Notes under the pieces: model-generated
Told to the model about the DNA's origin: nothing
The model's database searches: none
Seen by the model: the letters and a program-made list of their open reading frames with translations, nothing else
Made by a program: the position numbers and the translations under genes
Virus record (IMG/VR): IMGVR_UViG_3300050120_000230
Location: 248,001-312,000 of that record
Length of the DNA: 64,000 nt
Direction: 5' to 3' (one strand)
In this document: piece by piece, positions 21,071 through 54,136 of the stretch
Numbering within the stretch: the stretch's first letter is position 1
Layout: each line of letters begins with the position of its first letter

Positions 21071-21153
21071 GCCACGGTGGCTCAGCGGCGACAGCGCGTC
21101 ATTCGTAATGACGAATACAAACACCGGGGGTTCGAGTCCCTCCCGTGGCACCA
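21071..21153 (+). tRNA. tRNA-Thr(CGT), enlarged variable loop, encoded CCA
   Basis: Acceptor GCCACGG/CCGTGGC; anticodon stem CGTCA/TGACG, loop TT-CGT-AA; T-loop TTCGAGT. Confidence 0.85.
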
Positions 21154-39768: not shown

Positions 39769-39804
39769 CTTCTGTCATTTGGTTGACTAAATCTAAATTA
39801 CTCT

Positions 39805-39897
39805 CTGAGTGGCCGCGCGGCGCGAAGGGAGCCTAAAGAACACGGCGCCGCTGGTTCCGGCCGGGTTGGATTCCCGGTGATCCGGCGGCGTCGTCAC
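39805..39897 (+). ncRNA. GC-rich structured element of unknown class upstream of valS
   Basis: Stems CGGCGC/GCGCCG and CCGGG-TTGGATT-CCCGG within a longer CGCTGG/CCGGCG helix. Confidence 0.35.
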
Positions 39898-39940
39898 TAA
39901 ATACGCACTTAATCGCCATACCGTAGGAGGATAGGCAAAT

Positions 39941-41422
39941 GTGGGACGTAAGCAGCTAACGAAGACCTTCGATCATCGCACCGAAGAGTCCTCGATCTAT
40001 CAGAATTGGGAGACTAGCGGTGCGTTCGCCCCTCGCGGCGACGGTCCTGCTTATTTTCTCCCAATGCCACCGCCGAATATCACCGGCATCTTGCACATGG
40101 GGCACGCACTTTTCGCGACCCTGCAAGACATCTCGACCCGCTATCATCGCATGAAAGGGGACGCCACGTTGTGGCTGCCGGGAAGCGACCATGCGGGCCT
40201 CGCAACGCAAGACAAGCTCGATGCTCTCATGATCGAGCAAGGGCTCGACCCTAACGGTCCAGAGTTCGATGCGTTCGCGGAAACCTACAAGCTCAGCCTG
40301 CAAGGCACGATCATGAAACAGCTTCGAAGCTGTGGTGCATCGTGTGATTGGTCCCGCGAGACGTTCACGCTCGACGACCGCTACTCCAACGCCGTCCAGA
40401 CGGCTTGGAAAAAGTGCAACGACGCTGGCCTGACCTACGCCAAGGAAGGTGAACTCTTCATCAACATGGAGCCATTGGCCAAGCGTCTGCTTGACCATCT
40501 CGATGCTGGTGATCTGAAGATCATTCCGGCCGGTGGAGAAGGAACTCTGCGGAACTTCCTGACCAAGATCGAGCCATGGAACATCAGTCGTAAAATCCGC
40601 TGGGGTCACAAAATCCCCGGATGGTTCCACGACGGGCACAACATGGTCTTCGATACATGGTTCTCGTCGGCACTCTGGCCGTTCGCCACGCTTGGTTGGC
40701 CAGACGACACCGAAGACATGCAGCGATTCTACCCGGCGGCCATGATCGAAACGGCTGACGACATTCTGTTCTTCTGGTGTGCGCGGATGCTCATGATGGG
40801 CCTCCTGCTCACCGACCGTCTGCCGTTCGACACGATCTTCCTGCACGGTTTGATCCGTGACAAGCACGGAAAGAAGATGTCGAAATCGGCTGGCAACGGC
40901 ATCGACCCACTCGACATCATCGAACGTTACGGCGCCGACAGTATGCGGTTTGCCTTGGCCGAAGCTGCCACGCCCGGTCAAGACATGAGGATGTGGGACG
41001 ACAAGTTCCAAGCAGGCAAAGCTCTGCGGACGAAACTGTGGAACGCCGCTCGATATTCCTTGGCCCATTACGAACGCCTAGGAAGCCCGCAGGAGCCCTT
41101 TAAGCCCTCGAAGCACTACGACGACGTTGAGATGGAAAAGAGGCTCACAGCGGCTCACAGGGACGCTACAGAGGCATTTGAAGAGCTACGTTACCACGAG
41201 GCTGCTCATGGGATCAGAAAGTTCATCTTCGAAGACTTGTGTGGCTGGTATATCGAGGCCACGAAGAGCCGTCTATACGACGAAGATGACCAAGATGCTC
41301 TTCAAACCCTGATGTGGGCTCTGGATGGCACGTTGAAGATGCTTCATCCGATCATGCCGTTCATCACTGAGCGCATTCGTGAGGCATATTCGGGCACGCC
41401 GCTCATCACAGATGCGTGGTAG
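39941..41422 (+). CDS. valS: Minimal valyl-tRNA synthetase (no CP1 editing domain, no C-terminal coiled coil)
   Basis: PPPNITGILHMGH, GSDHAGLATQ, WNISR..RWGH.IP, VFDTWFSSALWPF, KMSKS, YG.D..RF, LHP.MPFITE. Confidence 0.95.
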   Translation: MGRKQLTKTFDHRTEESSIYQNWETSGAFAPRGDGPAYFLPMPPPNITGILHMGHALFATLQDISTRYHRMKGDATLWLPGSDHAGLATQDKLDALMIEQGLDPNGPEFDAFAETYKLSLQGTIMKQLRSCGASCDWSRETFTLDDRYSNAVQTAWKKCNDAGLTYAKEGELFINMEPLAKRLLDHLDAGDLKIIPAGGEGTLRNFLTKIEPWNISRKIRWGHKIPGWFHDGHNMVFDTWFSSALWPFATLGWPDDTEDMQRFYPAAMIETADDILFFWCARMLMMGLLLTDRLPFDTIFLHGLIRDKHGKKMSKSAGNGIDPLDIIERYGADSMRFALAEAATPGQDMRMWDDKFQAGKALRTKLWNAARYSLAHYERLGSPQEPFKPSKHYDDVEMEKRLTAAHRDATEAFEELRYHEAAHGIRKFIFEDLCGWYIEATKSRLYDEDDQDALQTLMWALDGTLKMLHPIMPFITERIREAYSGTPLITDAW

Positions 41423-41726: not shown

Positions 41727-42002
41727 TCAGAGCGTAAGGAACATTTTCGCGAAGACAGCATCGGCCGGGACCTTGCATCCCACGATGTATTCGTAGTTCA
41801 CCGAATGCATGGTGCAGAATGTCCAATCGTTCGTCATGAATGGCGCGACTGCATCTGGAAAATCAGAAGGTTTGATTTTCGAAGAGATCGTGACCGTGCA
41901 TGGGAAACCATTGTCGATCATGTATTGGAGACGTTCATCCCAATCGGCGTGTTTCTGGTAATACTCACCAGCCCATTCGCTTAGAGGAATGCACCTACTC
42001 AA
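41727..42002 (-). CDS. DAxxFK[LM]xW-family protein
   Basis: DAVFAKMFL. Confidence 0.65.
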   Translation of the reverse strand: MSRCIPLSEWAGEYYQKHADWDERLQYMIDNGFPCTVTISSKIKPSDFPDAVAPFMTNDWTFCTMHSVNYEYIVGCKVPADAVFAKMFLTL

Positions 42003-42262
42003 AACCAGAACAACTTGAACATAGTTGCATCGGTCTCACTGACCGTTTCGAATGTCGGCTTGTAGCCTATGCCAGAATACCAACTGGCATTCATGTTCTC
42101 AATGCACCAGTCCCATGTTTCATGGGCCATGAAGTAGCCGTCGTTCTGGTTGCCCTCAACGAGATGGCGAGGCAAGTCGATCTTATATACGACAGGTTTC
42201 GTCGATTGGATCAGTTCGACCCAATTGTTCAAGCCACAGTAAGATTTACCGAGAGCAATCAT
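41999..42262 (-). CDS. DAxxFK[LM]xW-family protein
   Basis: WCIEN...DATMFKLFWF. Confidence 0.75.
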   Translation of the reverse strand: MIALGKSYCGLNNWVELIQSTKPVVYKIDLPRHLVEGNQNDGYFMAHETWDWCIENMNASWYSGIGYKPTFETVSETDATMFKLFWF

Positions 42263-42576
42263 AGCCAGAACGTCTTGAAGAGCACGGCGTCGCGCTCGTT
42301 GAATAGTTGAAAATGGATATACGTCTTGGGACGGGGCTCATAGTGACAGACGTTCACCAGTCCTTCTCTATTTTCCATGAGCCAGTCATAGGCATCTTGT
42401 GCTCGCCCACTGAACATGTTCGGCCCGAAGTCATAGGACGCGCGCTTCGGTGTGGCAGCCGTTCGAAGCTTCAGGCCAAACGTCGCCACGGTCACGTTGC
42501 AGAGTTCAATGATCTCTGGCGCGGGCTCATTAGCACCATCGCCCCATCCGAAAGGAAACACCGGCCTCACATCCAC
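42259..42576 (-). CDS. DAxxFK[LM]xW-family protein
   Basis: DAVLFKTFWL. Confidence 0.75.
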   Translation of the reverse strand: MDVRPVFPFGWGDGANEPAPEIIELCNVTVATFGLKLRTAATPKRASYDFGPNMFSGRAQDAYDWLMENREGLVNVCHYEPRPKTYIHFQLFNERDAVLFKTFWL

Positions 42577-42830
42577 ATCAACTTGAACTGCAAGGCATCG
42601 CGATAATTGGGAATGCCCAGATAGAAAACATCTGCATTTGAATTCGGGTAAAACAGGTCCGCAAAATTTGCCTTTGCCCAGTTGAATGCGGCTTCCGCCT
42701 TTGGCTCCCAGTTATAGACTGCCACCGGCGCGTCGCAACATTGAATGGCTTCTCGTTGCAACGCAAATACCCAGCCCGCCGCAACTTCGACCGGCCCAGA
42801 GATTTCCAAAATCGGGTCAGAGATTTCCAT
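42567..42830 (-). CDS. DAxxFK[LM]xW-family protein
   Basis: DALQFKLMWM. Confidence 0.75.
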   Translation of the reverse strand: MEISDPILEISGPVEVAAGWVFALQREAIQCCDAPVAVYNWEPKAEAAFNWAKANFADLFYPNSNADVFYLGIPNYRDALQFKLMWM

Positions 42831-49072: not shown

Positions 49073-49148
49073 GGAGCGGTAGCTCAGTGGTAGCAGCGCC
49101 GGTTTGTCAGGCCGAAGGTCGCGGGTTCGATCCCCGTCCGCTTCGCCA
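49073..49148 (+). tRNA. tRNA-Asp(GTC), encoded CCA
   Basis: GGAGCGG/CCGCTTC; loop TT-GTC-AG. Confidence 0.9.
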
Positions 49149-49173
49149 TTTCATTTGAAGCTAGGTGATTTGA

Positions 49174-49245
49174 GCGGCTGTAGCTCAGTGGTAGAGCATC
49201 TCGTTGCCAACGAGAATGTCGCGGGTTCGAATCCCGCCAGCCGCT
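49174..49245 (+). tRNA. tRNA-Gly(GCC), no encoded CCA, flanked by a 13-bp inverted repeat
   Basis: GCGGCTG/CAGCCGC, U73; TCTCG-TTGCCAA-CGAGA. Confidence 0.9.
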
Positions 49246-49281
49246 CAAATCACCTAGAAGGCAATCCTCCGAGACCTTTAC

Positions 49282-49355
49282 GGAGCGTTCGACTATGGGT
49301 AAGTCATCACCCTTTCAAGGTGAGGTAGCGGGTTCGAGCCCCGCACGCTCTACCA
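49282..49355 (+). tRNA. tRNA-Glu(TTC), encoded CCA
   Basis: TCACC-CTTTCAA-GGTGA. Confidence 0.9.
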
Positions 49356-49357
49356 AT

Positions 49358-49431
49358 GGACCGTTCGTCTATGGGTAGGACACCACGTTCTCAGCGTGGG
49401 GGAAGGGGTTCAAGCCCCCTACGGTCTACCA
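49358..49431 (+). tRNA. tRNA-Glu(CTC), encoded CCA
   Basis: CCACG-TTCTCAG-CGTGG. Confidence 0.9.
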
Positions 49432-49468
49432 ATCTCAGCTTCGGTTGAGACGATCTTTGAAACTATAT

Positions 49469-49540
49469 GCGGGCGTAACTCAGCGGTAGAGTGTCAGCCT
49501 TCCAAGCTGTTCGTCGCAGGTTCGATCCCTGTCGCCCGCT
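49469..49540 (+). tRNA. tRNA-Gly(TCC), no encoded CCA
   Basis: GCGGGCG/CGCCCGC, U73; TCAGC-CTTCCAA-GCTGT. Confidence 0.9.
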
Positions 49541-49549
49541 CACTTTCAT

Positions 49550-49621
49550 GCAATCTTCGTCTATCGGCTAAGACGCCTTGCTTTCCGGCAGGAAAGAGCA
49601 GTTCGATTCTGCTAGGTTGCT
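49550..49621 (+). tRNA. Atypical tRNA-Gly-like gene with non-canonical (6- or 8-nt) anticodon loop
   Basis: GCAATCT/AGGTTGC plus U73; T arm AGCAG-TTCGATT-CTGCT; CTTGC-TTTCCG-GCAGG. Confidence 0.6.
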
Positions 49622-52198: not shown

Positions 52199-54136
52199 AT
52201 GACCGAACCCTACGATCACGCGACCGTCGAGCAGAAATGGCGCCAGTTCTGGGCGAAATCACGCCTGTTCGATCAGGCGCTCGCAAGCCGGACGAAGACG
52301 AAATACTACGTGCTGGAAATGTTCCCGTATCCCTCGGGTCGCATCCACATGGGGCATGTCCGCAACTACGCCATCGGCGACGTGCTGGCGCGCTACAAGC
52401 GCAGCCAAGGCTTCAACGTGCTTCATCCCATGGGCTGGGACGGCTTCGGCCTGCCCGCTGAGAACGCGGCCATTGAAAATGGCACGCACCCTGCGGACTG
52501 GACGTTCGCCAACATCGCCGCCATGCGTGAGCAATTGAAGCGTCTGGGCTTGTCCGTGGACTGGACGCGCGAAATCGCGACTTGTGACCCGGCGTACTAC
52601 GGTGAGCAGCAAAAACTCTTCCTGCGGCTGCTGTCCGCTGGTCTCGCCTATCGCAAAGAAAGCGAAGTCAACTGGGACACCGTGGACAACACTGTGCTGG
52701 CCAACGAACAGGTCATCGACGGTAAGGGCTGGCGCTCGGGTGCACCTGTCGAGAAGCGGATGCTGACCCAGTGGTTCTTCCGAATCACCAACTACGCCGA
52801 TGAACTGCTGGACGGTTTGAAGACCCTGTCGAACTGGCCGGAGAAGGTCAAGACGATGCAGCAAAACTGGATCGGCAAGGACGAAGACGGCAACACGATG
52901 CTGCGCGACTGGGGCGTGTCTCGGCAGCGGTATTGGGGTTGCCCGATCCCGGTGATCCATTGCACCGAGTGCGGCATCGTCCCGGCCGAAACGCCGGTGA
53001 TCCTGCCAAAAGATGTGGACTTCACAATCCCCGGCAACCCGCTGGCCAACCATCCGACGTGGAAACACGTCGCGTGCCCGACGTGCGGCGAGGATGCGAC
53101 GCGTGAGACCGACACCATGGACACGTTCGTGGACTCGTCGTGGTATTTCGCCCGCTTCGTCAGCGCCGACCCCGCGAACCCGATCTGCGATGCGGGCATC
53201 GATCATTGGATGCCGGTCGATCAATATGTCGGTGGTATCGAACACGCCATCCTGCATCTGCTGTATGCCCGGTTCTTCACCAAAGCGTTGCGCGACACGG
53301 GCTGTTGGCGAGTGGACGAACCATTCACCGGGCTGTTCACGCAAGGCATGGTCACGCACAAGACCTATCGAACCGTGATCGGCAAGGAATGGGTCTACCC
53401 GGAAGAAGTGACCCTCAACAGCGACGGCGTCACGGCCAAGATGACCGCCACCGGACTTCACGTCGAAATCGGCGCGGCCGAGAAGATGTCGAAGAGCAAG
53501 AAAAACGTCGTCAGTCCTGACGCGATCTTCGACAAGTATGGCGTCGATGCCGCCCGCCTGTTCGTGCTGTCAGACAGCCCGCCGGAGCGCGATTTCGTGT
53601 GGTCCGAAGCTGGTGTCAAAGGCGCCGCAGGATTCATCCAGAAAGTCTGGAACGTCATCAACGAACCCGATGGCGTGCCGGACCAAACCAACATCATCCT
53701 GACCCACCAGACGATCAAGGACGTGACCGATTGTCTGGACAACTTCAAGTTCAACAAAGCGGTCAGTCTCCTGCATGTTTTCGTAGCCGGGATCACCGGT
53801 AAGGCCGACGTGGCGACCAAGAAAATTCTGATCCAACTGATCTCGCCGATGACGCCACATCTGGCCGAAGAGGCATGGCACGATCTCAAGGGTTGCTACT
53901 CCATCGTGGATGAACCGTGGCCGACGTTCAATCCCGCTCTGTTGGTGCCGCCGAACGTCACCATGCCGGTGTCGGTGAACGGCAAGCGCCGCAGCGAGAT
54001 CGTTGTCCCGCTGGATCACGCCGACGACTTGGTCATCGCCATTGCGACGGCTGATCCCGAAGTCATGCGCTTCATCGGCGATGGTGTGAAGAAAGCCATC
54101 GTCGTCAAGAACCGCATCGTAAATCTGGTGGTGTGA
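52199..54136 (+). CDS. leuS: Leucyl-tRNA synthetase lacking the CP1 editing domain
   Basis: [89 protein letters not shown]. Confidence 0.97.

What the first reader, a model, noticed from the sequence alone, without database searches (positions are those of the whole stretch)
39941..41422. 493-aa ValRS with the CP1 editing domain excised
Seen: GLTY-AKEG-ELFINMEPLA replaces the ~200-aa CP1 insertion that lies between GL[AI]Y and QW[WY]..M.PLA in bacterial ValRS. The second Zn segment is reduced to WFHDGHNMV and the C-terminal coiled coil is absent. HIGH (HMGH) and KMSKS are intact. Established: CP1 removes Thr mischarged onto tRNA-Val. Inference: a near-urzyme synthetase that may mistranslate Val to Thr (statistical proteome), rely on trans-editing, or have altered tRNA specificity.
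Basis: partly seen in the sequence, partly recalled or inferred. Interest (0 to 1): 0.75.

Follow-up and report, generated by a model that had tools for sequence, protein, structure and literature searches.

The report
Proofreading-free mini ValRS in megaphage
A giant bacteriophage carries a conserved, stripped-down valyl-tRNA synthetase that keeps all its catalytic and tRNA-anticodon parts but has lost the whole proofreading domain, so it is a natural test of whether valine charging can do without error correction.

Summary
Window 39941-41422 (+) encodes a 493-aa bacterial-type ValRS. HIGH, KMSKS and all Val-pocket positions are intact. Three parts of T. thermophilus ValRS are missing: about 186 residues of CP1 with its Zn knuckle (replaced by a 4-residue turn), about 29 residues of the second Zn insertion, and the last 157 residues (junction and coiled coil). 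An AlphaFold model (pLDDT 94) superimposes on ValRS 1gax at Z 42 and 1.7 A over 477 residues. It is neither a one-off nor an artefact. At least 124 related proteins share the same 7-9-residue junction, mostly on 200-650 kb viral contigs and including cultured Stenotrophomonas phages RAS14 and CM1. They form one clade (100% support) and evolve under purifying selection (dN/dS 0.16). The window lies in a 415-kb megaphage record with 52 tRNAs, two of them tRNA-Val. That phage also has a LeuRS that lost CP1 independently, and no recognisable editing domain anywhere. Best reading: an active, editing-free ValRS that charges tRNA-Val during infection. Fidelity is then either left to the host ValRS or not maintained. 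"Near-urzyme" is overstated, because the enzyme has MetRS-like minimal class Ia architecture. Activity and mistranslation are untested. I found no paper describing a natural CP1-less ValRS.

The parts
39941..41422 (+). Gene for the 493-aa CP1-less, C-terminally short ValRS (GTG start, TAG stop)
39925..39930 (+). Shine-Dalgarno AGGAGG, 10 nt before the GTG start
   Evidence: The GTG start and N-terminus VGRK(Q/K)LTKTF are also found in relative L013; L014 has the same N-terminus in frame
39842..39894 (+). Long GC-rich leader hairpin whose tip (39861-39877, CCGGG-UUGGAUU-CCCGG) resembles a tRNA T-arm; possible regulatory or processing element
   Evidence: Fold -59.5 kcal/mol, z -2.3; core identical in relative L013 despite flanking indels; unique in the genome; no Rfam match; absent from L014
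39780..39794 (+). Conserved block TGGTTGACTAAATCT containing a -35-like TTGACT (39783-39788)
   Evidence: Promoter function is inferred only
40094..40105 (+). HIGH signature (HMGH, residues 52-55)
40427..40480 (+). CP1 junction GLTY-AKEG-ELFINMEPLA (residues 163-180); AKEG (40439-40450) is the turn of a beta-hairpin that replaces about 186 residues of CP1 plus Zn knuckle
   Evidence: (strands 165-168 and 171-174)
40622..40648 (+). Remnant of the second (Zn-2 / CP2-side) insertion, WFHDGHNMV (residues 228-236); about 29 residues shorter than in Tth ValRS and 18 shorter than in the closest relative
40874..40888 (+). KMSKS signature (residues 312-316)
40997..41419 (+). Anticodon-binding helix bundle (residues 353-493); the protein ends at the Trp equivalent to Tth W705, so the junction and coiled-coil domains are missing
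   Evidence: Pfam Anticodon_1 3e-23
52199..54136 (+). Second editing-free class Ia enzyme of the same phage: 645-aa LeuRS in which CP1 (about 195 residues) is replaced by KDEDGNTM (52877-52900)
   Evidence: leuS_bact 756 bits, above the cutoff; alignment to 6q89; relatives; coordinates
49073..49621 (+). Phage tRNA cluster (Asp, Gly, Glu, Glu, Gly, one unassigned); context showing a phage-borne translation set. The two tRNA-Val genes lie outside the window (genome 166982 and 170089)

Best explanation
This is a working valyl-tRNA synthetase that has no proofreading. It belongs to an old clade carried by jumbo and mega-phages. The clade derives from bacterial ValRS through one deletion of the CP1 editing domain (with its Zn knuckle) and loss of the C-terminal junction and coiled-coil domains. 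This phage lineage later also lost the second insertion. The enzyme should make Val-AMP in a canonical ValRS pocket and transfer Val to tRNA-Val (the phage's own GAC and CAC species, and probably the host's), which it recognises through the retained anticodon-binding helix bundle. Because CP1 is gone, it cannot hydrolyse Thr-tRNA-Val in cis. Mischarged tRNA is then either corrected in trans by the host's full-length ValRS or tolerated during the short infection. The likely benefit is extra tRNA-Val charging capacity for the phage's own tRNA set from a compact gene. Shown: the architecture, the conservation, the purifying selection, the single origin, the phage context, and the absence of any phage-encoded editing module. 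Inferred: catalytic activity, tRNA-Val specificity, the fidelity outcome and the selective benefit.
For: Identity as ValRS: the best NCBIfam models are valS (520 and 475 bits, against 214 for ileS), and the best PDB hit is Tth ValRS at 4e-109. The model has pLDDT 94.4 and aligns to 1gax_A at Z 42.3, 1.7 A, 477 residues. Catalytic competence: HIGH, KMSKS and the positions aligned to the Tth Val pocket (P41, P42, N44, D81, W456, I491, W495) are 100% conserved in the 124 CP1-less proteins wherever the position is present; 43 of 49 highly conserved positions in the second Rossmann half are retained. Selection: dN/dS is 0.16 against an 83%-identical relative, with dS 0.79. More than 100 clusters at 90% identity span 40-83% identity. 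Single origin: the CP1-less sequences form one side of one branch at 100% SH-aLRT in two trees. Phage context: a 415-kb virus record with 52 tRNAs including tRNA-Val GAC and CAC with A73, plus LeuRS, CysRS, SerRS and PheRS-like genes. The Atlas cluster is 97% viral and the relatives' loci carry tail genes. Precedents: M. mobile LeuRS lacks CP1, and its nonapeptide linker supports aminoacylation when it replaces CP1 in E. coli LeuRS (PMC3643597). CPR-bacterial ValRS end within 2-8 residues of this protein's end. No editing module was found in the genome: PF13603, PF04073 and PF07973 gave nothing at E<=1.
Against: There are no biochemical or expression data: no RNA run holds the locus. The protein scores below NCBIfam's equivalog cut-offs (520 vs 704, 475 vs 612), as expected for a protein missing 40% of the model. 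From my memory of the ValRS literature, the C-terminal coiled coil contributes to tRNA-Val binding in T. thermophilus ValRS, so charging may be inefficient. Conserved positions are retained less well in the CP core (11 of 21) and the anticodon bundle (11 of 19), so tRNA handling may have changed. The genome record is only about 72% complete, so a trans-editing gene could lie in the missing part.
Confidence: 0.7

Rival explanations
1. It is a non-translational ValRS paralog. It keeps adenylation and/or tRNA binding but serves another process: supplying Val-tRNA or Val-AMP to a modification or biosynthetic pathway, sequestering tRNA-Val, or acting as a regulator.
For: Duplicated synthetases with disrupted CP1 that bind tRNA but do not aminoacylate are documented (Sulfolobaceae LeuRS-I; PMC9437257). 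Phages can use aa-tRNA outside translation (Mom uses Gly-tRNA; PMC13219725). A chromosomal ValRS-like paralog with a reduced CP1 exists in Cellulomonas. Retention is reduced in the CP core and the anticodon bundle.
Against: All catalytic and Val-pocket residues are invariant. The gene sits in a genome with a near-complete tRNA set and several other synthetases, some embedded among cognate tRNA genes. No partner enzyme is recognisable nearby; all neighbours are ORFans.
Confidence: 0.15
2. It is an active synthetase with changed amino-acid or tRNA specificity, for example charging Thr, another near-cognate amino acid, or a non-Val tRNA.
For: A few family-specific substitutions lie next to pocket residues (I47 for V, C280 for V, A266 for T, I269 for L) and in the anticodon domain (R426 for Y, F430 for W). 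The genome has unusual tRNAs, including a CTA-anticodon tRNA.
Against: The pocket residues themselves are identical to canonical ValRS. The substitutions are conservative. The phage encodes ordinary tRNA-Val GAC and CAC with discriminator A73.
Confidence: 0.08
3. It is a decaying remnant of a captured host valS, or an assembly artefact, with no function.
For: Large deletions are typical of gene decay. The closest relatives differ in the length of the second insertion.
Against: The ORF is intact with an RBS. dN/dS is 0.16. The same junction is conserved in 124 proteins from many samples and in cultured phages. The fold is confidently predicted and compact.
Confidence: 0.02

Closest known systems
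Canonical bacterial ValRS (T. thermophilus ValRS, PDB 1gax/1ivs; NCBIfam TIGR00422, NF004349)
   Same: Same catalytic core, HIGH and KMSKS, Val pocket, stem-contact fold and anticodon helix bundle: 41% identity over 477 structurally aligned residues, Z 42.3.
   Different: Lacks CP1 and the Zn knuckle (about 186 residues), the second insertion (about 29 residues) and the C-terminal junction and coiled-coil domains (157 residues). It scores below the curated equivalog cut-offs.
Mycoplasma mobile LeuRS (PDB 3ziu), the documented natural CP1-less class Ia synthetase
   Same: CP1 is replaced by a short peptide linker in an otherwise intact enzyme (PMC3643597). Foldseek TM by query is 0.79. The phage's own LeuRS (window 52199-54136) repeats this architecture, with linker KDEDGNTM against KEEIDGKIT.
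   Different: Different amino acid (Leu). It is a single reduced cellular genome where the enzyme is the sole housekeeping LeuRS. Here the enzyme is a ValRS, an accessory viral gene, part of a large clade, and also lacks its C-terminal tRNA-binding domains.
Minimal MetRS (e.g. S. aureus 7wpn, A. aeolicus 2csx, T. thermophilus 1a8h)
   Same: Same overall domain composition and size (about 480-500 residues): Rossmann fold, small CP, stem-contact fold, helix bundle. TM by target 0.74-0.81.
   Different: Only 20-24% identity. The pocket and best sequence models are ValRS, not MetRS.
Huge-phage synthetases (Al-Shayeb et al. 2020, PMC7162821); GenBank 'valyl-tRNA synthetase' of Stenotrophomonas phage RAS14 (WAX21612.1, 449 aa) and its counterpart in phage CM1
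   Same: Same phenomenon (phage-borne aaRS with phage tRNAs) and, for RAS14, the same CP1-less architecture and clade.
   Different: The paper's main text does not mention loss of editing domains. The database entries are named plain ValRS with no note on architecture.
CPR-bacterial ValRS of about 730 aa (e.g. Candidatus Berkelbacteria TSC94435.1)
   Same: They end within 2-8 residues of this protein's C-terminus, so they too lack the junction and coiled-coil domains.
   Different: They keep a full-size CP1 segment (about 190 residues), and in the tree they are not specifically sister to the phage clade.

Membership tests
Valyl-tRNA synthetase (class Ia) | HIGH and KMSKS signature motifs in a Rossmann fold | tested here: met
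   HMGH 52-55 and KMSKS 312-316; conserved across the family; Pfam tRNA-synt_1 5e-89
Valyl-tRNA synthetase (class Ia) | ValRS-type amino-acid pocket (positions aligned to Tth P41, P42, N44, D81, W456, I491, W495; the residue list is from my memory of Fukai et al. 2000) | tested here: met
   P43, P44, N46, D83, W240, I275, W279, identical in the query and in all CP1-less relatives where present
Valyl-tRNA synthetase (class Ia) | Best match to ValRS models rather than IleRS, LeuRS or MetRS, and above the curated equivalog cut-off | tested here: inconclusive
   ValRS models are clearly best (520 and 475 bits against 214 for ileS), but below the cut-offs of 704 and 612 because about 40% of the model is missing
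Valyl-tRNA synthetase (class Ia) | CP1 editing domain that clears Thr-tRNA-Val | tested here: not met
   A 7-residue segment stands where full-length ValRS have a median of 193; no PF13603; the structural alignment skips it
Valyl-tRNA synthetase (class Ia) | Anticodon-binding helix bundle | tested here: met
   Pfam Anticodon_1 3e-23; helices 353-481 in the model, aligned to 1gax up to residue 705
Valyl-tRNA synthetase (class Ia) | C-terminal junction domain and coiled coil | tested here: not met
   The protein ends at the residue aligned to Tth W705 of 862. The tail after this point has a median of 0 residues in the family against 167 in full-length ValRS
Valyl-tRNA synthetase (class Ia) | Charges tRNA-Val with valine | not testable with these tools
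   Needs enzyme assays. Cognate tRNA-Val genes are present in the genome
Natural CP1-less class Ia synthetases (type: M. mobile LeuRS) | CP1 replaced by a short linker joining its two flanking beta-strands, with the rest of the enzyme intact | tested here: met
   AKEG turn between strands 165-168 and 171-174; compare the nonapeptide linker of MmLeuRS (PMC3643597)
Natural CP1-less class Ia synthetases (type: M. mobile LeuRS) | Mischarging and mistranslation as a consequence | not testable with these tools
   Needs charging assays and proteomics
Urzyme (minimal catalytic core; about 130 residues, no CP and no anticodon-binding domain, as I recall the definition) | Only the catalytic core is present | tested here: not met
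   493 residues with CP core, stem-contact fold and anticodon bundle

The most novel reading that the evidence does not exclude
Megaphages of this lineage run a deliberately proofreading-free aminoacylation set. ValRS (ancient CP1 loss), LeuRS (separate, recent CP1 loss) and a PheRS-like enzyme with no detectable beta-subunit editing domain all lack editing modules, and the genome has no trans-editing factor. This would imply selection against editing during infection, for charging speed, ATP economy, or useful mistranslation, and not mere tolerance of its loss.
Probability: 0.3. Interest if true: 0.8.

Novelty: new variant of a known kind. Interest (0 to 1): 0.6.

Why it matters
From established work as I recall it, ValRS is a textbook case for proofreading: valine and threonine are nearly the same shape, so the synthetic site alone is expected to err at roughly one in a few hundred, and CP1 removes the error. 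A large, conserved, natural clade of ValRS without CP1 shows that valine charging without cis-editing is evolutionarily stable in at least one setting, viral infection. It extends the single M. mobile LeuRS precedent to a second amino acid and to viruses. It also gives a direct experimental handle, because cultured members exist (RAS14 and CM1 on Stenotrophomonas maltophilia): one could measure how much Val-to-Thr ambiguity a replicating phage tolerates. In addition it provides a compact ValRS scaffold of about 450-490 residues for enzymology. Two independent CP1 losses in one phage lineage suggest a general trend in phage-encoded synthetases that genome surveys have not reported.

Tried and rejected
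1. CPR bacteria as carriers of a CP1-less housekeeping ValRS. This was suggested by Atlas clusters of 713-742 aa and rejected. The ~730-aa CPR enzymes keep a ~190-residue CP1 segment and lack only the C-terminus. A scan of reference genomes with P0131 returned only ~30%-identical, CP1-containing ValRS.
2. Phage-encoded trans-editing. PF13603, PF04073 (YbaK) and PF07973 (tRNA_SAD) gave no hit at E<=1 in the 415-kb record. B3_4 gave only a 13-bit sub-threshold hit. All nine neighbouring ORFs have no Pfam or PHROG match. The record is about 72% complete, so absence is not proven.
3. HIGH-less relatives. 42 database proteins seem to start at the Met of HMGH. The DNA of one of them (L014) shows the full N-terminus in frame upstream, so this is a gene-calling artefact. 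In L014 the codon at the start position reads GTT, so its true start is unclear.
4. Nucleotide search of phage records found nothing; only the protein-level search did.
5. The leader element has no Rfam match and is absent from L014, so it is lineage-specific and not a family feature.
6. Expression: no RNA run holds the locus. The only full holder is a peat metagenome that is probably the source sample.
7. P0036 (Sphingomonas assembly) context: not on record.
9. Complex prediction was not used, because it gives no verdict for protein-RNA pairs.
10. The BFVD viral structure library has no counterpart.

Full report
**What is there.** Window 39941-41422 (+) is an intact 493-codon ORF. It starts with GTG, and an AGGAGG ribosome-binding site lies 10 nt upstream. 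Pfam finds tRNA-synt_1 (5e-89) and the class I anticodon-binding domain (3e-23). Among NCBIfam models the ValRS equivalogs are clearly best, at 520 and 475 bits against 214 for IleRS. They fall below their curated cut-offs because large parts of the model are unmatched. The best solved relative is T. thermophilus ValRS (1gax, 4e-109), and it aligns in three blocks: query 6-~166 to Tth 3-~167, query ~171-231 to Tth ~358-418, and query 236-493 to Tth 452-705.

Three parts of the canonical enzyme are therefore missing:
- About 186-190 residues containing the first Zn knuckle and the CP1 editing domain, replaced by AKEG.
- About 29 residues of the second, Zn-binding insertion, leaving WFHDGHNMV.
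- The last 157 residues. From my memory of Fukai et al. 2000, these are the anticodon-stem-binding (junction) domain and the coiled coil.

HMGH (52-55) and KMSKS (312-316) are present.

**Structure.** An AlphaFold2 model built on 63 family members is very confident (mean pLDDT 94.4, pTM 0.93). Residues 165-168 and 171-174 form a beta-hairpin with AKEG at the turn, so the two strands that normally lead into and out of CP1 are joined directly. The model aligns to 1gax_A with Z 42.3 and rmsd 1.7 A over 477 residues at 41% identity, with model 4-493 matching chain 1-705. By Foldseek it covers 0.92 of itself on 1gax. It also matches natural minimal MetRS almost end to end (TM by target 0.81), and the CP1-less M. 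mobile LeuRS 3ziu (TM by query 0.79). "Near-urzyme" is therefore an overstatement: this is minimal class Ia architecture, complete with an anticodon-binding domain.

**Not a one-off and not an artefact.** A search of 5.8 billion proteins returned more than 100 clusters of 410-550-residue relatives at 40-83% identity. None has the Pfam editing-domain hit (PF13603), whereas nearly all of the longer ValRS hits further down the list do. Many relatives sit on contigs of 200-650 kb. In a joint alignment of 271 homologs, 124 proteins have 7-9 residues between query Y166 and I174, while 145 full-length ValRS have 159-455 (median 193).

- Motif spacing gives the same picture. HIGH to WxISR is 156-162 in nearly all short proteins against about 353 in full-length ValRS, and KMSKS to the C-terminus is about 178 against about 353.
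- The second insertion is bimodal within the family (20-25 or 39-52 residues). The query's nearest relatives keep it, in a Cys-free form 18 residues longer than the query's. Its loss in this phage is therefore recent.
- In two maximum-likelihood trees, all the CP1-less sequences included form one side of a single branch with 100% SH-aLRT support. This holds for the GenBank enzyme of Stenotrophomonas phage RAS14 in the first tree.
- The only exception is a Cellulomonas chromosomal paralog with a 46-residue CP1 remnant, which nests among full-length ValRS.
- The root is not determined. With CP1 as the ancestral state, the pattern means one old loss.
- RAS14's enzyme (449 aa; HLGH, KFSKS) has the same architecture and is annotated simply as valyl-tRNA synthetase.
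- The ESM Atlas cluster for the family has 82 members, 97% of them viral. BFVD, the viral structure library, has no counterpart.

**Selection and functional sites.** Against the gene of an 83%-identical relative, dN/dS is 0.16 with dS 0.79. The positions that align to the Tth Val pocket (P41, P42, N44, D81, W456, I491, W495; the residue list is from my memory of Fukai et al. 2000, the mapping) are P43, P44, N46, D83, W240, I275 and W279. They are identical in every CP1-less protein that covers them, as are HIGH and KMSKS.

Of 138 positions that are at least 80% conserved in full-length ValRS, 101 are kept in the family:

| Region | Conserved positions kept |
|---|---|
| N-terminus and first Rossmann half | 36 of 49 |
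| Junction and CP core | 11 of 21 |
| Second Rossmann half with KMSKS | 43 of 49 |
| Anticodon-binding bundle | 11 of 19 |

The query keeps 82 of the 93 positions that are at least 90% conserved. Family-specific substitutions (for example F206 for W, P212 for D, L203 for Y) cluster around the site left by CP1. The 42 database members that seem to lack HIGH are gene-calling artefacts: the DNA of one shows the full N-terminus in frame upstream.

**Genomic context.** The window is bases 248001-312000 of a 415,409-bp virus record that is about 72% complete, assembled from a peat metagenome. Related enzymes sit on roughly 570-kb contigs. The record encodes 52 tRNAs, including tRNA-Val GAC and CAC with discriminator A73 and an encoded CCA end. 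It also encodes CysRS, SerRS, a HisRS-like fragment, a PheRS-like protein and a LeuRS.

- The LeuRS (window 52199-54136) scores above its equivalog cut-off (756 bits). About 195 residues of CP1 are replaced by KDEDGNTM, which resembles the KEEIDGKIT linker of M. mobile LeuRS (PMC3643597).
- Only two other CP1-less LeuRS relatives were found. One is on a 569,661-bp contig, the same length as the contig carrying a short ValRS, so probably the same contig.
- The next-best LeuRS hits are full-length Caulobacter LeuRS at about 52% identity. The LeuRS deletion is thus a separate and much younger event, and the host is probably a Caulobacter-like alphaproteobacterium (inference).
- No IleRS, ThrRS, ProRS or AlaRS was found.
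- No CP1-type, YbaK-type or tRNA_SAD editing domain was found anywhere at E<=1. The PheRS B3_4 domain gave only a 13-bit hit.
- The immediate neighbours of valS are all ORFans.

**How it most likely works.** The enzyme should activate valine and charge tRNA-Val by the canonical class Ia mechanism, using the anticodon bundle for recognition. From memory, A35, C36 and A73 are the main tRNA-Val identity elements. Without CP1 it cannot perform post-transfer editing. From established enzymology, as I recall it (Fersht and Kaethner 1976), the ValRS synthetic site rejects Thr only a few hundred-fold, and I recall that editing-defective E. coli ValRS mutants are viable but ambiguous (Doring et al. 2001). 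I therefore expect some Thr-tRNA-Val. It would either be resampled by the host's full-length ValRS or incorporated.

There are precedents for both reductions:
- M. mobile LeuRS lacks CP1 entirely, and its linker supports aminoacylation when placed in E. coli LeuRS. The associated mistranslation is reported by Li et al. 2011, as cited in PMC3643597.
- CPR-bacterial ValRS naturally end where this protein ends.

I put 0.7 on "active, editing-free ValRS". The rivals are:
- A non-translational paralog (0.15). Precedents are Sulfolobaceae LeuRS-I (PMC9437257) and tRNA-dependent DNA modification by Mom (PMC13219725).
- Altered specificity (0.08).
- Gene decay or an artefact (0.02).

**Novelty.** It is known that huge phages encode up to 15 synthetases (PMC7162821), but that paper's main text does not mention loss of editing domains. 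Six full-text searches found no description of a natural CP1-less ValRS or of editing-free phage synthetases. Members are in public databases under the plain name valyl-tRNA synthetase. I rate this a new variant of a known kind: a ValRS counterpart of the M. mobile LeuRS case, but viral, clade-wide, and also lacking its C-terminal domains.

**Limits.** No activity, expression or fidelity data exist. The trees are unrooted. The genome is incomplete. Domain names and kinetic figures for canonical ValRS are from memory, not from a tool.

Noticed in passing
window 52199-54136 (+): 645-aa LeuRS with CP1 (about 195 residues) replaced by KDEDGNTM. Only two CP1-less relatives are known; the nearest full-length relatives are Caulobacter LeuRS at about 52% identity. 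This is an independent, recent loss of editing in the same phage.
   Followed up: yes
window 39769-39940 (+): The valS leader has a conserved -35-like block and a long hairpin tipped by a T-arm-like stem-loop. The core is identical in the closest relative (L013) and unique in the genome, with no Rfam match. It could be a tRNA-mimic operator or a processing site.
   Followed up: partly
L096:1402-2532 (genome 170810-171940, outside the window): A 376-aa PheRS alpha / mitochondrial-type PheRS-like protein lies between two tRNA-Phe genes and next to tRNA-Val(GAC). No PheRS beta-subunit editing domain scores above the cut-off in the genome, so it may be a monomeric, editing-free PheRS.
   Followed up: partly
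L011:1426-2013 (-) (genome about 378727-379314): A 195-aa HisRS/HisZ-like fragment lies between two tRNA-His genes. Whether it is a truncated or a split synthetase is unknown.
   Followed up: no
genome 373385-373472; window 49550-49621; window 21071-21153: A tRNA with a CTA anticodon (amber-suppressor-like, called 'Pyl' by ARAGORN), a tRNA-like gene with an unassignable anticodon loop, and an unusually long (83-nt) tRNA-Thr(CGT).
   Followed up: no
window 41727-42830 (-): Four tandem small ORFs (87-105 aa) just downstream of valS on the opposite strand. Three of them share similar C-terminal endings (..FKLFWF, ..FKTFWL, ..FKLMWM). They look like a paralog array and have no Pfam or PHROG match.
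   Followed up: partly
P0230 / P0392 (Cellulomonas sp. Root930 and Root137 chromosomes): A 696-aa 'class I tRNA ligase family protein' that nests among full-length ValRS but has only a 46-residue CP1 remnant. This is an independent reduction in a bacterial paralog.
   Followed up: partly
P0108, P0112, P0113, P0117, P0119, P0120 (about 700-750 aa; P0117 from Candidatus Berkelbacteria): ValRS that keep CP1 but end within 2-8 residues of the phage protein's end, so they lack the junction and coiled-coil domains.
   Followed up: partly
L014:5824-7383: Database proteins of this family are often called about 40-52 residues too short (starting at the Met of MPPPN or of HMGH), because the true start is GTG. 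In L014 the start-position codon reads GTT, so its initiation codon is unclear.
   Followed up: partly
L007:496-2112 and L010:1192-2712 (-): The phage CysRS has an N-terminal extension of about 88 residues and the SerRS a C-terminal extension of about 85 residues beyond their family models.
   Followed up: no
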